Positions 7,131 through 57,004 of a stretch of DNA of 64,000 nt are shown here, piece by piece. Location of the stretch: assembly GCF_902459465.1 (NCBI RefSeq), contig NC_047065.1, positions 21,390,001 to 21,454,000 of the forward strand, read 5' to 3'. The first letter of the stretch is position 1. Each line of letters opens with the position of its first letter. The notes under the pieces are model-generated. The model ran no database searches, was not told the origin of the DNA, and worked only from the letters and a program-made list of their open reading frames with translations. The position numbers were made by a program, and so were the translations under genes. Origin of the DNA: Asterias rubens. Lineage: Eukaryota.

Positions 7131-8627
7131 TAATACTCATCAAAATAGTACCAGCATTATAGTAATAGCGTTGTTGCAACATACTAATAAAATAACTGTA
7201 TTATTGCCAAAATTTGAAGGGAATAATTTCTCTAAATAGTTTACACTATCGACAGCAGTTAAGTGACCACGTGAGTTTTTATCGTTTATTTTTATTTTTA
7301 GTATTTACCAATCTATAACCCTACTTAATGCATAGCTGAGAAGCAGATGTTAAATTATGTACAACGAAATCAATAGATATACAAAAATAATAGTATAATA
7401 CTATAAATAGAAGCAGCTTACAAAACTTACAAAAATACCATAAGTACTGTATGAATACAATAGCATATTAAACAAATCCAGTACTGTAGATTTTGAGGCC
7501 ATAAAATGGAATACAATTTCAGATGCAAACCCTGTACAAAACATGTGATATATAATTTAGCACCTTATAAGGGTTTACAAGGTGCTACGGCGCATACAGC
7601 AGCCACAGCCAGGAACACCAGGGCGAACCCCGTATCTTTTCGATAAGTGCACTGGGTTCTTTTGCATGCATTACACAACACATGGGACCAACGGCTTTAT
7701 GTCCCATCCGAAGGACGAAGCAATGGCCAAGTGCTTGCTTAAAGGCAGTGGACTGTTAAACAAGAAGTGGCTGTTAAACAAAACTAACAAAAACCCAATG
7801 AATATTATACTTCACAAGTACATATTATTAAACAAATCTAGTACTGCAGATTTTTAGGCTGAAAAATGAATAAAATTTCAGATGAAAACCCTGTACAAAA
7901 CATATAAATCATCCAGTTTAAATGCTTTTAAACCTTTTCTCCTTTGGGATCAAAAAGGGTCAACTCTTCACCTTTAAATATAGAAGCAGATTACAAAAAT
8001 ACCATAGCTATTGTATGACTACACCTCTCTTAACATTCATGCACTGACGTCACCATTCTAACTCAAATTTAATGAGGCCATCGGCGCACGCCATGCCACC
8101 AACAGTACCAGCCACTCGATCCAAGTTGCTGTGGCTGCGCCAATAGCCTCGTTTTGGGTTTATTGTGATGTCATGCATAAATATTAAGAGAGGCGTATTT
8201 TATACTCTACAAGTACATTTATTCTTTAAAAAATCAGTTACTGCAGATTTTTAGGCTATAATATGAATACAATTTCAGTTGAAAACTTTGTACAAAACAT
8301 ATATAAACAATCCAGTTTGTTAATTTTAAAAAAAATTCTTTTGCAGCTAAAAAGAAAGCATATTCTAATTTCTTTGCCTTAGATTTTAGTTTGACTGTTA
8401 ACACTGGTGACATCACAGTTTGTTCAACACTTTGTAGAAGGACATAAAACCATTGTGTCTCAGTGACATTAATGTGCAAACCATTTAAAGTTTCCAAATT
8501 CATGTTCCATCAGCAATGAGTAGTTGTGATAATCATAATTCTCCATCCTCACACCTATAAAATGAGTTGTAAAAAATCTTTGGTTAAAAATTGAGCTGCT
8601 CAAAAGTTAAGTTGAAACATCTGTTTG

Positions 8628-50739: not shown

Positions 50740-52407
50740 TGATTTTTCTGCAGTAATTTGTTTCTTTATATGATGAGGATCGCGTTTTAGAAAAGTCTGA
50801 ACTGGGAAGGACAAATCTGTCAAATGGAAAGTGTGCACAAGCTTTTAAAGGAAACTGTAGTATTTACATGTACTGTTTTGTAAATACCATCAGTACACAC
50901 TACTGTATTTTGGGGATGTACATGTATATGGATATGGAAAATGTCATTTTTTGCCATAAATGATGATGTTTTTAAGAAACTGCATAAATCACTCTGAGCC
51001 AAGGAGAGCTTCTAGAGGCTACTTTATACACTCATCTCTACATATTGTATATTAACTAATTTGAGATACTTGTGATTAACCTAAGGGGCACTTTTGATTC
51101 ACGGTCAATACCTTCCCTGTAGAAGGAAAAACAACAGTTTAAAAAAACCTTGGTCCTTGGGTGGCACCTCACCCCGTCCCGCCCTCGGCTATACTGCTGC
51201 TTTTTTTGTGTTTTTTTTAAGAAAGTGTTGTTTAGTTGTAAGGATATACAGAAATTTCACAACCTCCTTAAAGCAATATCACTTTGGAATAAAGAATTTC
51301 CACAATTTCAGGTCGTTTACACAAGTGTTTTATTGTGTTACTCATAATTACAATGCTCCATCTTTCATGCACATATCACTTTGTTATACATTACAGTTAT
51401 TATACAACTAGTTTGTCAATTCCTTACAACTGAATGAAACAATATTTCAACTTTACTCCCAGGGTTGGACGTGACAAAATAAATCTAGACTTGGCGTCTG
51501 TTGGTATAGTAAGGAAACACTCAATCGGTCAGGAAAACCCAACAATTCTTCTTTTCAAATTACTGATAGAAATTTGTTTGCGGTTGGCAGGTTTCTGAAT
51601 AAGCGGGGAGCGATAATAAACTTATCTAGCTAGTTGGGGTCACAAAGATACATTACAAAAGAAATATATGGTCAGAAATTATGCTTTCTGAAAAATTTTA
51701 GTTCTTGTTTTTGTTACAAAAAAGAAACAGGGGGGGGAAGGTCAAGTACTTGAGGAGAAAAACACAAATTTAAAACTAAAGAACGAAACAAAAAATTTGA
51801 ACTGCATTTTGTTAGAAAAAACTGCATGAATAACAAGCGTACATAATATAACTAAATAAATCAAACAATCCATAAACAAACCAAGATATTTGATTCAATC
51901 AAAACAATATAAACCAGAAATGTGTTAATATGTGAAAATAAGCAAGAGTATAAGGTTTCACTAAATAAAGTATAGACAATAGATTTATTGTCTACGGTAC
52001 TTAAAAAATAATGATCAAGAACAACAAAAAGGTTTACAAATGTTCACACACTCCAAGTGAACAAAGAAAAGTGAACAACAAATGTTTTTGAACATGTTTG
52101 AAAATGAAATAATGGTAAAGATTTGGCAATAATACAGCAAAAACAACCGATGAAAAGGGGACTTGTGCCTTCTTAAAAATATGCCCAGAAATATATTTTT
52201 AAAAATTATGTGGGTGATTTTTTATTAAAATTTAGAGTTGTTGCTTTACTGCGCTAATAGAAGTTTGCAATATATTCACATACACCAGTGAACAGATGAG
52301 AAATGTTTCAGGTCTGTTGAGAGAAATTTCCAATTGCTTCCTAATCACATGTCAGACTCGAGACAAAAGTCGACAGCGACTACAATGCCATCCGTGCCCA
52401 AGCACCT

Positions 52408-52588
52408 CCCCAATGCCCCAGGATCCTGAGTTCCCCAATGCCCCAGGATCCTGAGTTCCCCAATGTCCCAGGATCCTGAGTTCCCCAATGCCCCAGGATC
52501 CTGAGTTCCCCAATGCCCCAAGATCCCGAGTCCCCCAATGCCCCAGGATCCTGAGCTCCCCAATGCCCCAGGATCCTGAGTTCCCCAA
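52408..52588. repeat. 25-bp minisatellite (CCCCAATGCCCCAGGATCCTGAGTT) x7
   Basis: Seven adjacent units with few substitutions and no spacers. Confidence 0.92.
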
Positions 52589-52966
52589 GGCCTTGGACTT
52601 CGCTCTTGACAGGCACTGCAATTTACCTCTAGTTTAAGGGGCATGGCGATAGACCAATCCATTAAGCTCCGCCCCATTGCGTATTGACTAATCACAACGC
52701 AATGAAGGTCGGACAAATAAAGTCCGACATGCGTGCGCGTATACTTGGCGCACTCAGCAGAGTTGTGCTGAAAAGCATTGGAGAGGCTCACGTGTTGTTG
52801 CTCACACGTGCGTCATGGGCGGAGCCTACTGGATCGCTTTATTTACCTCTGGTAAGGTGTACTCTATGAGGACAATTTTAATTTGTATTGGAACTTTGCA
52901 AATGGGTACCATGCAGCAATTGTTTTGGGTGCCGTGGTTAATTTCGGGGGCCTGTCTCTCTGCTCT

Positions 52967-53133
52967 CTAACTGAGTTCATCGTAAAGGACATTCTGTTCA
53001 TTGTCTGCTACCGCCAGCTCTGCAGGATCATCAACATAGATTTGTGTCTTATGGCCAATGGCCACGTGCTTCATCAACTCCCATGCATCGTCTGCCTCAT
53101 CCTTGCAGTAGGAACAGATCCACTGGGAGGGAC
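52967..53133 (-). CDS. Alternative distal terminal exon of the hnRNP C-like gene (zinc finger B)
   Basis: Acceptor TCTTATCCGACAG, phase 1. Encodes GPSQWICSYCKDEADDAWELMKHVAIGHKTQIYVDDPAELAVADNEQNVLYDELS*. AATAAA on - strand at 52838-52843. Confidence 0.8.
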
Positions 53134-56100
53134 CTGTCGGATAAGATTATGGATCACCTTAAAGATGTAGATTGATCGACTTAACATACAGGAGGACATC
53201 ACATAGGGCCTTTTAGAGGTGTATTCCTCTTGGACTTTAATGAAGTAGATTTTTTAAGTCCATCGGATAGATCCGAGTTTGTTTGGCTGTGGCTCTAGCT
53301 GATTTTGGTAATGGCTTCTACTTAAGCAACATGGCTTGAATATGTATTGCTATGTTCCAACCATAGCCCAGCCGGAACTTTGACTTTGTCAGACTGGACA
53401 GGAAATAGTATTGCCCCTTTGCAGGACTTTCGATTCAAAATATGTAAAGTTTCAAAACATGGCACCTGGCTTTTTCAGTAGCATTGATTCCTAGCATTGA
53501 CTCAAGAGTTCTGTCCGAATTTATAACAATTAGAAATGAGAAGGAGACGAATGTAGACTGTGTTGGATGAGGCAGACCAGCTTGTTGGGAGTTGATGATG
53601 GCGGCTGACGAGTCAAAAGATTAGCTTTGCAAGCTTGACGTCCACGGGTTAAAGTATCCATGATTTTAGGATTCAAAGTGGTCGACTCTCCACCTGATCA
53701 GTAATTTGTTTTGCTGGACCATCAGTTGGCTCAGGGGAGAAGCAATCAAAACTGATGCTCAGAGTTAAGTTGTCAAAGTCTAGTTGTACTCCACCTAAAT
53801 GAACACAGTTGTATTTTTTTAAATAATTTCCTGGAGATATCAAATCGAGACACGTGACTTTTCGGAATCGAACTGCCGTGTCCATGTACTGCCCTTTATT
53901 TATTTTTTTCATTGCTATGAAATTAATTGTCTCAAAGTATATCTCATTGAATGGCATAAATCTACAGTGCCCTTGATCATGCTTTGCACAATCTTGTCCA
54001 CTTTGTGTCATTCCATCTCACCATGAAAACAGATCAACACAAGAATTGTTAAAACGGGGTCACATCACAAAAAAGGATGAATAACCGACTTGCAAGATTT
54101 CCCGATTTCAAACAGAAGCTAATGGACTTCCGTTTTGATCTTGAAACAAATTCAAACCCCCCCCTTCCTAAAACCCCTCTCCAGCCCATCGTCTCCGCCG
54201 TATTGTCTTCAGTCATCCATGAATATCTGCGTGTGATGCTCCTGAGCCACGTGTCTCATCAACCCCCAACAACTGTCTGCCTTCTCTTTGCAATAAGCAC
54301 ACATCCACAAGGGGGGCTCTGTGTGGGTTCCAGGGTAGAAAAACAGGTGGTCATTTATTTTTACAAGAGTCTCTCCTCCCGACTCGTTTCCCTTCGCACT
54401 TTAAAATATGCAAGAAAGGGGCTTCCCAGTGGAATGACAACAATTTATTTATATAGGAAGAAGAGATATCAAATTTCTCGTTCAGTTTTTTTTTCCAATA
54501 CTTTTCCTTATGTGGAAAGTTACAGTGCTATGCAAAATGAAAAAAGTCTCATACACTGTACACGTATAATGTACATACATACGCCTCTCTTAATATTTAT
54601 GCATGAGGTACGTCACAATGCTTACCCAAAACGAGGCGATGGGCGCAGCCACTGCAAGTGATGGGGGAAGTGCGCCCATAGCCTCATTTTGGATAAGAAT
54701 TATGACGTCATGCATAAGTATTAAGAGAGGCGTATACAGGACATTTTGTAGTGTCTACTAGAACAAACAGTGCAAGGGCAGATCTGATTTTGACAGCTAC
54801 ATGCGTACTTGAGTGTATAATGATGTAGCGATCAAGCAGCAGCTGTAGCCCCCCCCCCTCCATTTTGGACACGGCCGAAATCTTTATAGAAAAAGTAACT
54901 AGAGGGCTGCATGTTTATCCCCAATCGAGTTCCCTGCACACAGTAGCAGGGCTGTATTTCACAAAGAGTTAAGTCTAATCTTATCTAAAGTAAGGATGAG
55001 TTACTCGTTCCAACCTTAGACTGGTGGTTTTAAGTTTTCAACAAACTCCTTAGACTAGTCTTTGTGAAATCAACCCCATGAGTCGTAATGTCTTTAAGTT
55101 TGATCTAAGCCACTTACCCTGTCCATCAAATTGTTGGGCCTTCCTCCCTGAGAAAGTCTTCTGTTTTTTGGCTGCTGGTGGGCCAGATGGAATAATGACA
55201 GGGAGACTAGCTGGATCAATGTAACCACTATCAACAGAGATTGTTAAGATGAATCAACCCTTATATTGACTACAGTAAAACTTATTAACAAAAGATGGTT
55301 TTGGTGGTTCAATCTTCCGTCTCATAACATTGTCTTCTTCATGGTGTTAGCCCAGTGGGTGTCTGGTGTTCTTTTGAAAACCTTTGGACACCTTGTTTTA
55401 TCTGTCATTTACATCTACTTGTATTGTAAGTGATCAATTTGGACATCCAGTTTTAAAATTTCCAGCAAATTTAGACACCCTTTTACCAATCCTGGTTGCC
55501 TTGTTCTTCTCAATGTTCTTCAAATCGAAGAATGGCATAAAATATCACAAGCCACTCTCAAACTTCTCCTTCCAATAATAACAACTCGAAACTCAACTTG
55601 GCAATTATTTTCCACATTTTGATACTACATTTTAAGTTGTACTGGGCCCAATTTCATGGCTCTGCTTACCGCTGAATTCTGCGCTCACGTGCAAGCGCCA
55701 TGTTACTAGGCATTCTACGCTTACGAGGCTAGCGCCAAATTTTTGCGCTAGCCTCGTAAGCGGAGTACGCAGGCGCAGAAGCCAAAATTTGCCGCTAACC
55801 CGTGAAACACGCTTGTCATAAGCACAGAATTCCCTGCTTCCATAAGCGCCGATTCTGTGCTTACTGTAAGCAGAGCCATGAAATTGGGCCCTGGTCCTTT
55901 TGTTTCAAGCTTACCTGCTTACAGTTCCCTGCACTCTCTTGAAACCTTTTGGCCGGTTGGGATTTGGTTCACTAGCAATTCTTACATCTGAAGGAACAAT
56001 TTGAAAAGGGTGTGGTTGAAAATGTACATTTTGTAGTGTTAGAACTAAAGAATAATAAACCAAGAGGGAAACTGATAATTAACCCCCGTCAGTTTTCCTT

Positions 56101-57004
56101 GTGGTATATTACTTGATATTTGTTACCAAAAAATGTTGCATCCACTGGATGTGGCTTCCCAGGTTGTGTTGTGAATAAGGTGTGATCCCTGGTTACACGG
56201 CTGCTAACGGTTGTACGGCTTCCGACTATTGCACCCTAAAGCTATCATATTGACCAAATAAAGAGACCACTAACATAGGGCTACATAGCTCAGCTAGTAG
56301 AGTGTAGGTCCCTAGTTCAAATTTGGATCTAGTAAATTTGTCTTTGTTCAAACCTTATTAGGTGTTTCTGAGGGTAGCTTGTGCTAACCAGGCCTGATAT
56401 AGTCCATAGAGGCAATGAAGGCAATTGCCTCTTTGCCCATGGTCATTGCCTTGTTGCCCTTGAAATGCTCCAATTTACAATTTCCTCATATGGTGCCCTT
56501 TACCAAGTAAATGCCTTGGTGCCCTTGCCACTTTCAAAAACGAACCATACAGTCCTGCTTTAATGCATAATAACATGATCAAACCATAGCCTTACCTAGG
56601 GGTTGTCTAGCAAGGACGGCTCCATATTCTCCTTCCCTAGCTTGCCTGGCATTGAGCTCATTGGTGTACTGCACAAAGCCAAAGCCCTCGTGGATACTGA
56701 TCCCGGTAATCCTGCCATACTTGCCGAAAAGCTTCTCAATATCCTGCTGCTGAACGAAGCCCGTGTTAAGGTTCCCGATGAAGATGCGCGAAGCCTTGGA
56801 CTTCATGTCGTTGAGGTTCGTCACGTTGCTGATGCCGGGGGTGAGCTGGGAGAATTGATTGGCGCCGCCGTGGGCGCCTGCATTGTGGGGATTCCCGAAC
56901 GGGCCTCCGTGTCCGTGACCACCCTGTGGATTGCTAAAACCACTGTGCTGGCCATGACCAAAGCCGAATCCACCTGGATTATGGCCTCCAAACATACTGT
57001 TCAT
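52967..57004 (-). CDS. HNRNPC: hnRNP C/RALY-type RRM protein with C-terminal C2H2 zinc finger (distal-exon isoform, 252 aa)
   Basis: Exons 57004-56596, 55987-55915, 55227-55118, 53133-52967. SNVTNLNDMKSKASRIFIGNLNT...HEGFGFVQY...DVRIASEP matches the hnRNP C/RALY RRM. It has an N-terminal G/H/F/N-rich low-complexity region, a basic AKKQK motif, and a last exon encoding CSYC-x12-HVAIGH. Probably the co-orthologue of HNRNPC/RALY/RALYL. Confidence 0.85.
53565..53598 (-). promoter_or_regulatory. Putative intronic RNA docking element complementary to both zinc-finger exons
   Basis: The - strand reads TCATCAACTCCCAACAAGCTGGTCTGCCTCATCC, the reverse complement of codon stretches in both exons (54256-54282 and 53071-53102). 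Confidence 0.6.
54209..54318 (-). CDS. Alternative proximal terminal exon of the hnRNP C-like gene (zinc finger A; isoform 233 aa)
   Basis: Acceptor ...GAACCCACACAG, phase 1 like exon 3. Encodes EPPLWMCAYCKEKADSCWGLMRHVAQEHHTQIFMDD*, paralogous to the distal exon. AATAAA on - strand at 53895-53904. Confidence 0.8.
54580..54735. mobile_element. Foldback MITE (ATACGCCTCTCTTAATATTTATGCATGA TIR)
   Basis: Inverted arms; second copy at ~8020-8200. Confidence 0.65.
55645..55890. mobile_element. Harbinger-like MITE, CTG TSD, in hnRNP C-like intron 2
   Basis: GGCCCCAATTTCATGGCTCTGCTTAC...GTAAGCAGAGCCATGAAATTGGGCC. Confidence 0.75.

What the first reader, a model, noticed from the sequence alone, without database searches (positions are those of the whole stretch)
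53565..53598. A single intronic element complementary to both alternative zinc-finger exons: candidate competing-RNA-pairing switch
Seen: in the - strand pre-mRNA the element reads UCAUCAACUCCCAACAAGCUGGUCUGCCUCAUCC. It can pair with proximal exon A (AGGCAGACAGUUGUUGGGGGUUGAUGA, 54282-54256) over 27 bp, with one G-U pair and two single-nucleotide bulges. It can also pair with distal exon B (GGAUGAGGCAGAC...UGGGAGUUGAUGA, 53102-53071) as two perfect 13-bp helices around a 6x8 internal loop. Its centre (CCCAACAA, CUG) matches exon A, while ACUCCCA and CCUCAUCC match exon B, so it fits each exon better in different places than a copy of either one would. It lies about 660 nt downstream of A and 460 nt upstream of B, and it cannot pair with both at once. 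Known: mutually exclusive exon choice by competing docking/selector pairings is established for insect Dscam1 and for duplicated exons in several Drosophila genes. Inference: pairing with A masks A so splicing goes to B, while pairing with B favours A and its proximal poly(A) site at ~53895. The element probably arose as an inverted copy of the exon and was kept where it pairs. I know of no such system in an hnRNP C/RALY gene or an echinoderm-like deuterostome. Because the product is an RNA-binding protein, autoregulation is possible.
Basis: partly seen in the sequence, partly recalled or inferred. Interest (0 to 1): 0.92.

Follow-up and report, generated by a model that had tools for sequence, protein, structure and literature searches.

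The report
Conserved intronic element pairing both alternative exons
Between the two alternative final exons of a starfish hnRNP C-like gene sits a 34-base sequence that can base-pair with either exon and is almost unchanged in six sea-star genomes while everything around it has diverged; this makes it a strong but untested candidate for an RNA-structure switch choosing between the two protein endings.

Summary
The window is Asterias rubens chromosome LR699095.1. The gene, on the minus strand, is "hnRNP C-like". NCBI annotates two isoforms, ending in zinc-finger exon A (X2) or exon B (X1).

The element (53565-53598) pairs with exon A over 27 bp (-43 kcal/mol). It pairs with exon B as two perfect 13-bp helices (-49 kcal/mol). 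Both are 7-8 sd beyond shuffled controls.

New here: the element lies between A and B in all six sea-star copies I could fetch, spanning two superorders, Forcipulatacea and Valvatacea.
- It is the only conserved block in the A-B interval.
- It is the top antisense match of exon A in each of the five loci that hold A, and top or tied for exon B.
- It is predicted to pair only with A or B.
- Two homologous genes with a single zinc-finger exon lack it.

Not supported:
- No two-sided compensatory change was found.
- The synonymous-site test is inconclusive.
- The proposed proximal poly(A) signal is not conserved.
- The direction of any effect is unknown.

An ADAR editing-complementary site and a single functional duplex remain live rivals.

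Verdict: a real, selected long-range pairing element. It is most likely a docking-like regulator of A/B choice: a new variant of a known kind, here with selectors inside coding exons, terminal exons, and an echinoderm host.

The parts
53565..53598 (-). Element E: a 34-nt docking-like sequence lying in the intron of the B isoform, downstream of exon A
   Evidence: Sequence verified. Unique in the window. Locally unstructured. Core TCAACTCCCAAC...CTG(G)TCTGCCTCA is present in six sea-star loci. A 38-nt perfect run, 53565-53602, is shared with L009; the next longest run in the interval is 21 nt.
53552..53564 (-). 3' extension of E (AACACAGUCUACA), conserved only among the forcipulatid-like copies; it can add a short second helix with codons 4-6 of either exon
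   Evidence: Conserved in A. rubens, A. amurensis, L009 and L001 with A/G and C/U changes that keep pairing possible. Valvatida instead carry CCUU(UU)GCA, which pairs with UGCAAGG of the exons.
54209..54318 (-). Exon A: proximal alternative terminal coding exon (zinc finger CAYCKEKADSCWGLMRHVAQEH, stop TGA at 54211-54209)
   Evidence: Translation. Matches the C-terminus of A. rubens isoform X2, P0016, and the X2 isoforms of A. amurensis, P. miniata and A. planci.
54256..54282 (-). Segment of exon A that pairs with E (27 bp, one G-U, two bulges in E)
   Evidence: -43.0 kcal/mol, z -7.2. Predicted probability that E pairs with A is 0.78-0.88 in transcripts truncated before B, in all five species.
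52967..53133 (-). Exon B: distal alternative terminal coding exon (zinc finger CSYCKDEADDAWELMKHVAIGH, stop TAG at 52969-52967)
   Evidence: Translation. Identical to the C-terminus of A. rubens isoform X1, P0004.
53071..53102 (-). Segment of exon B that pairs with E (two perfect 13-bp helices around a 6x8 loop)
   Evidence: I7, I8. (-49.3 kcal/mol, z -8.4).
53895..53904 (-). AATAAATAAA: candidate proximal poly(A) signal for the A isoform in A. rubens; inside the loop closed by the A:E duplex
   Evidence: Present in A. rubens. Not conserved at the aligned position in A. amurensis, and no canonical hexamer between A and B in A. planci. Its role is therefore uncertain.
55118..57004 (-). Constitutive upstream coding exons: exon 1 57004-56596 (G/H-rich N-terminus plus RRM), exon 2 55987-55915, exon 3 55227-55118. 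The exon 3 donor, in phase 1, joins either A or B
   Evidence: Read from the sequence. The concatenation reproduces P0004. RRM_1 Pfam hit on the product.

Best explanation
E is a selected long-range RNA pairing element, docking-like, in the pre-mRNA of the Asterias rubens hnRNP C-like gene. The same 34 nucleotides can form a duplex of about 27-35 bp either with codons 9-21 of proximal terminal exon A or with the homologous codons of distal terminal exon B. The two duplexes therefore exclude each other.

Likely course of events:
- During transcription E appears about 600 nt after exon A and can fold back on it. This covers the middle of exon A, from a few tens of nucleotides behind its 3' splice site, and loops out A's stop codon and 3'UTR.
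- That should disfavour use of A and let polymerase reach B.
- Once B is made, its equally strong complement competes for E and frees A.
- The balance of the two duplexes would thus set the ratio of the two protein C-termini.

Shown: the sequence, the dual and mutually exclusive complementarity, both isoforms being annotated, conservation across two asteroid superorders, and absence from two single-exon homologs.

Inferred: that pairing happens in vivo, that it affects A/B choice, and in which direction.
For: Conservation:
(1) E lies between A and B in all six sea-star loci: A. rubens, A. amurensis L003, JACSEG contig L009, ENA contig L001, P. miniata L004 and A. planci L005.
(2) In a five-species alignment of the A-B interval it is the only conserved block.
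(3) The longest shared words between distant species all fall in E, at 12-19 nt against 9-12 nt for the next best.
(4) Against L009 the longest perfect run of the interval is 38 nt and coincides with E, with 21 nt next.

Specificity:
(5) E is the top antisense match of exon A in each of the five loci that hold A (scores 32-39). For exon B it is top in four loci (29-38) and ties an unrelated hit in L001 (29 each). Other background hits score 18-26.
(6) A:E and B:E core duplexes are -45 to -52 kcal/mol in every species. With flanks the two energies agree within about 2 kcal/mol in four of five species, and differ by 8 kcal/mol in P. miniata.
(7) In partition-function folds of the whole A-to-B RNA, E pairs with A or B at a combined probability of about 0.8-0.9 and with other sequences at no more than 0.07. 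Before B is transcribed, P(E:A) is 0.78-0.88 in all five species.
(8) E is locally unstructured and matches no Rfam family.
(9) The single-zinc-finger homologs, Asterias paralog L006/L008 and distant homolog L007, show only background-level antisense matches.

Isoforms and precedent:
(10) Both isoforms are annotated in four species.
(11) Precedent exists in docker/selector competition and its origin by exon duplication (PMC6071210), in competing pairings at 3' variable regions (PMC6191721), and in Nmnat, where a stem around a proximal terminal exon controls the proximal/distal acceptor choice (PMC2724269).
Against: - No base pair shows a two-sided compensatory change. Variation is limited to 5-6 one-sided, wobble-compatible changes per duplex, plus breaks at helix ends.
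- Synonymous sites in the paired codons are not clearly more conserved than elsewhere. Codon-invariant fractions are 35% in exons 1-3, 45% in A and 54% in B, on tiny counts.
- Because both exons are held by protein-coding constraint, an element conserved for any reason would stay complementary.
- The mosaic fit (centre like A, flanks like B) can be ancestral rather than optimised.
- The proximal poly(A) signal is not conserved.
- Predicted A versus B preference in full-length folds differs between species: B in Asterias, A in the others.
- No expression, structure-probing or mutational data were available.
Confidence: 0.5

Rival explanations
1. Only one duplex is functional, most likely A:E. 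It forms co-transcriptionally and masks or loops out the proximal exon so that the distal exon B can be reached. Complementarity to B is an unavoidable by-product of A/B homology, and there is no real competition.
For: - In transcripts truncated before B, E pairs with A at 0.78-0.88 in all five species. In full-length folds A wins in three of five.
- The centre of E matches A, not B, in every species.
- An exact antisense copy of one exon would also pair with the other at about -60 to -89 kcal/mol, so dual pairing is not special in itself.
- The Nmnat precedent needs only one stem (PMC2724269).
Against: - In forcipulatid copies both flanks of E are perfect complements of B (13 + 13 bp) and fit A less well.
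- A:E and B:E energies are close in four of five species.
- In Asterias the full-length ensemble prefers B.
Confidence: 0.2
2. E is an editing-site complementary sequence. The exon-intron duplex recruits ADAR to recode one or more adenosines in the zinc-finger exon, with no primary role in exon choice.
For: - A deeply conserved intronic element complementary to coding sequence a few hundred nucleotides away is the classic anatomy of ADAR recoding sites (own knowledge: GluA2 Q/R and R/G sites; Drosophila comparative-genomics screens).
- Duplex length and imperfections fit ADAR substrates.
- Exon B codon 15 toggles Asp/Asn among species (GAT, AAT, AAC, GAC). In one register its first base faces a U of E, so a genomic G could be a hard-wired edit.
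Against: - No A-C mismatch is seen in either duplex.
- In the 13+13 register the toggling base faces a G.
- No RNA data were available to show A-to-G differences.
- For exon A, E would lie beyond a proximal cleavage site if one is used.
- The hypothesis does not explain why the element is missing from the two single-exon homologs examined.
Confidence: 0.12
3. E acts in the mature A-type mRNA. If that isoform reads through to the distal poly(A) site, E and the B sequence sit in its 3'UTR. There they could form a 3'UTR hairpin or pair with the A coding region, affecting translation, stability or localisation.
For: - No conserved canonical poly(A) hexamer lies between A and E. A. planci has none between A and B.
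- The duplexes are stable enough to persist in mRNA.
Against: - The 3' ends of the A transcripts are unknown here.
- A. rubens does have AATAAATAAA upstream of E.
- Ribosomes would unwind an A:E duplex.
- No precedent was checked.
Confidence: 0.08
4. E is conserved for a reason unrelated to pairing, such as a protein-binding splicing element or a DNA regulatory element. On this view its complementarity to the exons is a relic of an ancient inverted partial exon copy, or it is a neutral relic altogether.
For: - No compensatory covariation.
- Coding constraint on the exons would preserve complementarity passively.
Against: - The conserved block coincides with the complementary stretch and ends where complementarity ends.
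- Changes inside helices are mainly wobble-compatible.
- Lineage-specific 3' extensions of E differ in sequence yet each pairs with the exons.
- A neutral relic cannot survive when the rest of the interval is unalignable between superorders.
Confidence: 0.08

Closest known systems
Docking-site / selector-sequence competition in arthropod mutually exclusive exon clusters (Dscam1 exon 6, 14-3-3 zeta, Mhc, srp), and the duplication model of Ivanov and Pervouchine 2018 (PMC6071210)
   Same: One conserved sequence is complementary to a homologous sequence in each of several tandemly duplicated alternative exon units. Only one pairing can form at a time. The model predicts that duplicating one arm of a stem yields exactly this arrangement.
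   Different: - Here the 'selectors' lie inside the coding exons (codons 9-21), not in flanking introns.
- The docking-like site lies between the two exons, not upstream or downstream of the whole cluster.
- The alternative exons are terminal exons with their own stop codons.
- The host is an echinoderm.
- Function is untested.
Competing RNA pairings at 3' variable regions of Drosophila PGRP-LC, CG42235 and Pip (Pan et al. 2018, PMC6191721)
   Same: Choice among alternative 3' terminal cassettes is governed by competing long-range pairings with a docking site.
   Different: [quoted passage not shown] Here the pairing partner is exon sequence, and no 5' splice site is involved.
Drosophila Nmnat stem around the proximal alternative terminal exon (Raker et al. 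2009, PMC2724269)
   Same: There is a proximal terminal exon with its own 3' processing signals and a distal acceptor. A conserved long-range stem reduces the competitiveness of the proximal site and enables distal splicing.
   Different: The Nmnat boxes flank the proximal acceptor, and a single stem is involved. In the starfish the A:E stem starts inside exon A, downstream of its acceptor, and a second, competing partner (exon B) exists.
Vertebrate competing or bridging structures at duplicated exons: human ATE1 exons 7a/7b (PMC7797038) and SCN exons 5a/5b (PMC12772994)
   Same: These are deuterostome genes with tandemly duplicated alternative exons, regulated by deeply conserved complementary elements.
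   Different: The elements there are all intronic and the exons are internal cassettes. Those cases are validated by mutagenesis.
ADAR editing-site complementary sequences (own knowledge: GluA2, Drosophila and cephalopod recoding sites)
   Same: A highly conserved intronic element forms an imperfect duplex with coding sequence hundreds of nucleotides away.
   Different: No editing evidence exists here. One element serves two alternative exons, and no A-C mismatch is present.

Membership tests
Docking/selector competing-RNA-pairing system (Dscam-type) | One docking sequence is complementary to two or more selector sequences, one per alternative exon unit | tested here: met
   E pairs with A (27 bp) and with B (13+13 bp) in A. 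rubens. It pairs with both exons in all five species that carry both, with 29-35 bp in each core duplex.
Docking/selector competing-RNA-pairing system (Dscam-type) | The pairings are mutually exclusive because they use the same docking nucleotides | tested here: met
   Both duplexes use E positions 53565-53598. Ensemble folds split E between A and B, with no more than 0.07 going to other partners.
Docking/selector competing-RNA-pairing system (Dscam-type) | Selector sequences lie in the introns next to each variable exon | tested here: not met
   The partners of E are coding nucleotides inside exons A and B, codons 9-21.
Docking/selector competing-RNA-pairing system (Dscam-type) | The alternative exons are internal cassettes spliced in a mutually exclusive way | tested here: not met
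   Both exons end in stop codons and no downstream coding exon follows. They are alternative terminal coding exons.
Docking/selector competing-RNA-pairing system (Dscam-type) | The docking site is evolutionarily conserved above the surrounding intron | tested here: met
   Six sea-star loci from two superorders carry it, and it is the only conserved block of the interval.
Docking/selector competing-RNA-pairing system (Dscam-type) | Compensatory covariation supports the helices | tested here: inconclusive
   There are no two-sided changes, only 5-6 one-sided wobble-compatible changes per duplex and a few breaks. Most pairs are invariant.
Docking/selector competing-RNA-pairing system (Dscam-type) | Disrupting and restoring the pairing changes and rescues exon choice | not testable with these tools
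   This needs minigenes or embryo injections.
Nmnat-type loop-out of a proximal terminal exon | The complementary boxes enclose the proximal acceptor site | tested here: not met
   The A:E stem begins about 11-37 nt downstream of the exon A acceptor (54320-54319). It encloses the stop codon and 3'UTR, not the acceptor.
Nmnat-type loop-out of a proximal terminal exon | The proximal terminal exon has its own conserved poly(A) signal | tested here: inconclusive
   AATAAA is present in A. rubens (53904-53895), lost at the aligned site in A. amurensis, and absent between A and B in A. planci.
ADAR editing-site complementary sequence | A conserved intronic element forms an imperfect duplex with the edited exon | tested here: met
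ADAR editing-site complementary sequence | A-to-G differences between RNA and genome at a defined adenosine in the duplex | not testable with these tools
   No RNA-seq reads were available. The only indirect hint is an Asp/Asn (G/A) toggle at exon B codon 15.

The most novel reading that the evidence does not exclude
Sea stars have kept, since before the Forcipulatacea-Valvatacea split, a true two-way RNA switch. A single intronic docking sequence competes between selector sequences embedded in the coding sequence of two duplicated terminal zinc-finger exons of an hnRNP C-like RNA-binding protein, and so sets the ratio of two C-termini. This would be the first docker/selector-type system described in an echinoderm, and one in which protein-coding and structural constraints overlap in the selectors.
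Probability: 0.35. Interest if true: 0.75.

Novelty: new variant of a known kind. Interest (0 to 1): 0.62.

Why it matters
Docker/selector competition is well documented in arthropods. Only a handful of vertebrate genes have validated long-range structures at duplicated exons.

A deeply conserved example in an echinoderm would matter in three ways:
- It would show that the mechanism arises repeatedly wherever exons duplicate, as the Ivanov-Pervouchine model predicts.
- It would give a compact test case, with about 1.1 kb between the exons and a 34-nt element.
- Patiria miniata embryos accept injected morpholinos and mRNAs, so the test can be done in a tractable organism.

It would also be a case where the same nucleotides encode zinc-finger residues and act as selectors. 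That bears on how much synonymous and amino-acid variation such exons can tolerate.

If the element instead proves to be an ADAR complementary site, it would be one of the first conserved recoding substrates defined in echinoderms.

Tried and rejected
- **Neutral relic or chance inverted repeat.** Rejected: the element is conserved across two superorders while the rest of the interval is unalignable.
- **Repeat or transposon fragment.** Rejected: the core is unique in the 64-kb window. The nearby palindrome at 54579-54735 is a recent insertion absent from A. amurensis and unrelated to E.
- **Known structured RNA (snoRNA, miRNA and so on).** No Rfam match at E <= 1 over 52800-54500. The local fold is no better than shuffles, z = +0.5.
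- **Similar element in the neighbouring paralog.** Antisense hits in intron 1 of L006/L008 score 26-27. That is within the background seen in other loci (up to 29), and they lie in a locally repetitive stretch. I treat them as chance.
- **Synonymous-site constraint as support.** Counts are too small to tell.
- **RNAalifold-style covariation on exon-linker-E concatenates.** No two-sided changes.
- **More sea-star genomes through the protein searches.** The last protein search, with the exon B ORF, found only the query itself. X2 isoform look-ups failed because only the longest products are indexed. The Amphiura look-up also failed.
- **Transcript evidence for 3' ends.** None is reachable: the isoform proteins are recorded only on the genome records.
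Full report
**What is there**

The gene model read from the sequence is:
- exon 1, 57004-56596: G/H-rich N-terminus plus an hnRNP C-type RRM
- exon 2, 55987-55915
- exon 3, 55227-55118, whose donor is in phase 1
- then either exon A (54318-54209, stop TGA) or exon B (53133-52967, stop TAG)

Both A and B have acceptors in the matching phase. Each encodes a CxxC-x12-H-x4-H zinc finger followed directly by a stop codon.

Joining exons 1-3 to B reproduces protein P0004 exactly. P0004 is [quoted passage not shown], and the look-up places the window on LR699095.1 of assembly GCA_902459465.3. Isoform X2 (P0016) ends in exon A. The same X1/X2 pair is annotated in A. amurensis, Patiria miniata and Acanthaster planci. 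The two alternative endings are therefore an annotated, conserved feature of sea-star genomes. A-type and B-type exons form orthologous sets, so the exon duplication predates the Forcipulatacea-Valvatacea split.

**Checking the observation**

- The element at 53565-53598 and both exon segments read exactly as quoted.
- The repeat finder independently lists the two 13-nt perfect inverted arms with exon B (I7 and I8).
- RNAduplex gives 27 bp for A:E, with one G-U and two one-nucleotide bulges, at -43.0 kcal/mol. It gives -49.3 kcal/mol for B:E.
- Against 1000 dinucleotide shuffles these are 7.2 and 8.4 standard deviations out.
- The core is unique in the window, matches no Rfam family, and lies in a stretch whose local fold is no better than shuffles. 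It is therefore free for long-range pairing.

An inverted partial exon copy will always give such numbers. The real question is whether selection has kept it.

**Comparative test**

I fetched the orthologous loci through the X1 proteins: L003 for A. amurensis, L004 for P. miniata, L005 for A. planci. Two further copies came from other routes:
- L001, an ENA assembly contig whose exon 1 product is 86% identical.
- L009 (JACSEG010004557.1), found by scanning metagenome contigs for a degenerate pattern of the element. It carries E and exon B.

Results:
- In each of the five loci with both exons, a sliding duplex scan of the A-B interval gives one sharp minimum with both exons, at one site.
- That site carries the same core, TCAACTCCCAAC-N3-5-CTG(G)TCTGCCTCA.
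- A Smith-Waterman scan of each whole 9-11 kb locus with the reverse complement of each exon puts this site first for exon A in all five loci (scores 32-39). For exon B it is first in four loci (29-38) and ties an unrelated hit in L001 (29 each). Other background hits score 18-26.
- In a MAFFT alignment from exon A to exon B, the element is the only block conserved in all species. The interval is otherwise unalignable between Asterias, L001, Patiria and Acanthaster.
- The longest words shared by any two distant species all lie in E: 12-19 nt against 9-12 nt for the next best.
- Against the closer L009, blastn aligns only parts of the interval, at 80-93% identity, and a global MAFFT alignment gives 62% identity overall. 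Within it the longest perfect run is 38 nt at 53565-53602. The next longest is 21 nt.
- The distance from A to E (311-601 nt) and from E to B (165-614 nt) varies freely. What is kept is the sequence and its position between the exons, not the spacing.

**Does it keep pairing with both exons?**

- With 45-nt exon cores and 44 nt around E, both duplexes have 29-35 bp at -45 to -52 kcal/mol in every species.
- With wider flanks, A:E / B:E are -64.8/-64.2, -64.8/-64.7, -58.7/-60.5, -59.9/-68.2 and -56.7/-55.5 kcal/mol.
- In partition-function folds of the entire A-to-B RNA (838-1441 nt), the 34 nucleotides of E pair with A or B at a combined probability of about 0.8-0.9, and with anything else at no more than 0.07.
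- If the RNA is cut 30 nt after E, as during transcription, E pairs with A at 0.78-0.88 in all five species.
- With B present, the ensemble prefers B in the two Asterias species and A in the other three.
- The flanks of E differ between lineages yet still pair. Forcipulatid-like copies carry ACAGUCUAC, which can pair with GUGGAUCUGU or GUGGAUGUGU at codons 4-6. Valvatids carry CCUU(UU)GCA, which pairs with UGCAAGG at codons 9-11.

**Limits of the evidence**

- On exon-linker-E concatenates, no pair shows a two-sided compensatory change. Five or six pairs per duplex show one-sided, wobble-compatible changes: G-C to G-U in A. amurensis E, C-G to U-G where valvatid exon A has GUA, and U-A to U-G in L001. 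A few pairs at helix ends are broken, and the core is invariant.
- Among amino-acid-invariant degenerate codons, 35% are codon-invariant in exons 1-3, 45% in exon A and 54% in exon B. Inside the helices the counts are 3/2 and 4/3, too few to conclude anything.
- Exact antisense copies of one exon would pair with the other at -60 to -89 kcal/mol. Dual pairing is therefore expected from homology alone.
- The AATAAATAAA at 53904-53895 is changed in A. amurensis at the aligned position, and A. planci has no AATAAA or ATTAAA anywhere between A and B. The A isoform may therefore not have a conserved proximal cleavage site. The event could be a choice between two acceptors of one long terminal region.

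**Controls**

- The neighbouring paralog has one zinc-finger exon and lies head-to-head about 35 kb away on the same chromosome (L006; A. amurensis copy L008). It shows only antisense matches of score 26-27, within background, in a locally repetitive part of intron 1.
- A more distant homolog with one zinc-finger exon (L007, assembly GCA_964275005.2, species not identified here) has none. Its best score is 23.
- Among the genes examined here, the element is found only where the exon is duplicated.

**Mechanism**

What is shown is a selected element whose conserved extent coincides with its complementarity to two alternative exons, with mutually exclusive and near-isoenergetic pairings.

The best-supported reading is a docking-like regulator of A/B choice. 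A:E forms first, covers the middle of exon A and loops out its stop codon and 3'UTR. B then competes for E once it is transcribed. This is the arrangement predicted when one arm of a stem is duplicated together with an exon (PMC6071210). It resembles validated cases at 3' variable regions (PMC6191721) and at Nmnat (PMC2724269).

I put 0.5 on regulation of A/B choice by competing pairing, and 0.2 on a one-duplex version. The other rivals are:
- an ADAR complementary site, at 0.12, with a weak hint from the Asp/Asn toggle at exon B codon 15
- a role in the mature A mRNA if it reads through E, at 0.08
- conservation for non-pairing reasons, at 0.08

The direction of the effect and any autoregulation are not addressed by any data here.

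**Comparison with known systems and novelty**

It works like a docker/selector system but is not a standard member. The selectors are inside coding exons, the docking-like site sits between the exons, and the exons are terminal (see the membership table). It is not Nmnat-like in anatomy, because the stem does not enclose the acceptor.

Three full-text searches returned no paper describing such a system in echinoderms. Vertebrate examples with intronic elements exist for ATE1 (PMC7797038) and SCN genes (PMC12772994). I classify it as a new variant of a known kind.

Two notes from the scan on this same window (s1-150247 and s1-151204) describe the duplicated terminal exons and the RRM-zinc-finger architecture. 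Both agree with what I found.

Noticed in passing
window 52382-52617: A 25-nt tandem repeat, TCCCCAATGCCCCAGGATCCTGAGT, with at least 7 copies at 93-100% identity. It lies about 350 nt downstream of the exon B stop codon, probably in the distal 3'UTR.
   Followed up: no
window 54579-54735: A near-perfect palindrome of about 157 nt (arms 94% and 87% complementary) in the intron, about 260 nt upstream of the exon A acceptor. A related copy sits at window ~8126-8198. It is absent from the A. amurensis locus, so it is a recent MITE-like insertion and not part of the conserved mechanism.
   Followed up: yes
window ~55644-55891: A MITE-like element with 26-nt perfect terminal inverted repeats (GGGCCCAATTTCATGGCTCTGCTTAC...) in intron 2 of the gene. 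Short matches occur elsewhere in the window.
   Followed up: partly
L006 (LR699095.1:21477922-21490019), outside the window: A paralogous hnRNP C-like gene (P0022, 223 aa) with a single A-like zinc-finger exon lies head-to-head about 35 kb from this gene. Its exon shares CAYCKE and SCWGL with exon A. Antisense matches to its zinc-finger exon at L006:4628-4716 score only at background level.
   Followed up: partly
window 53088-53090 (exon B codon 15) and orthologs: This codon toggles between Asp and Asn among sea stars: GAT in A. rubens, AAT in A. amurensis, AAC in L001 and L009, GAC in P. miniata and A. planci. It sits at the edge of helix 1 of the B:E duplex. Such a pattern is sometimes left by hard-wiring of an A-to-I edit.
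   Followed up: partly
L001 (ENA ERZ26222911 contig) and L009 (JACSEG010004557.1): Two contigs filed in metagenome collections are sea-star nuclear DNA carrying this gene, that is, host sequence in metagenome assemblies. The species were not identified.
   Followed up: partly
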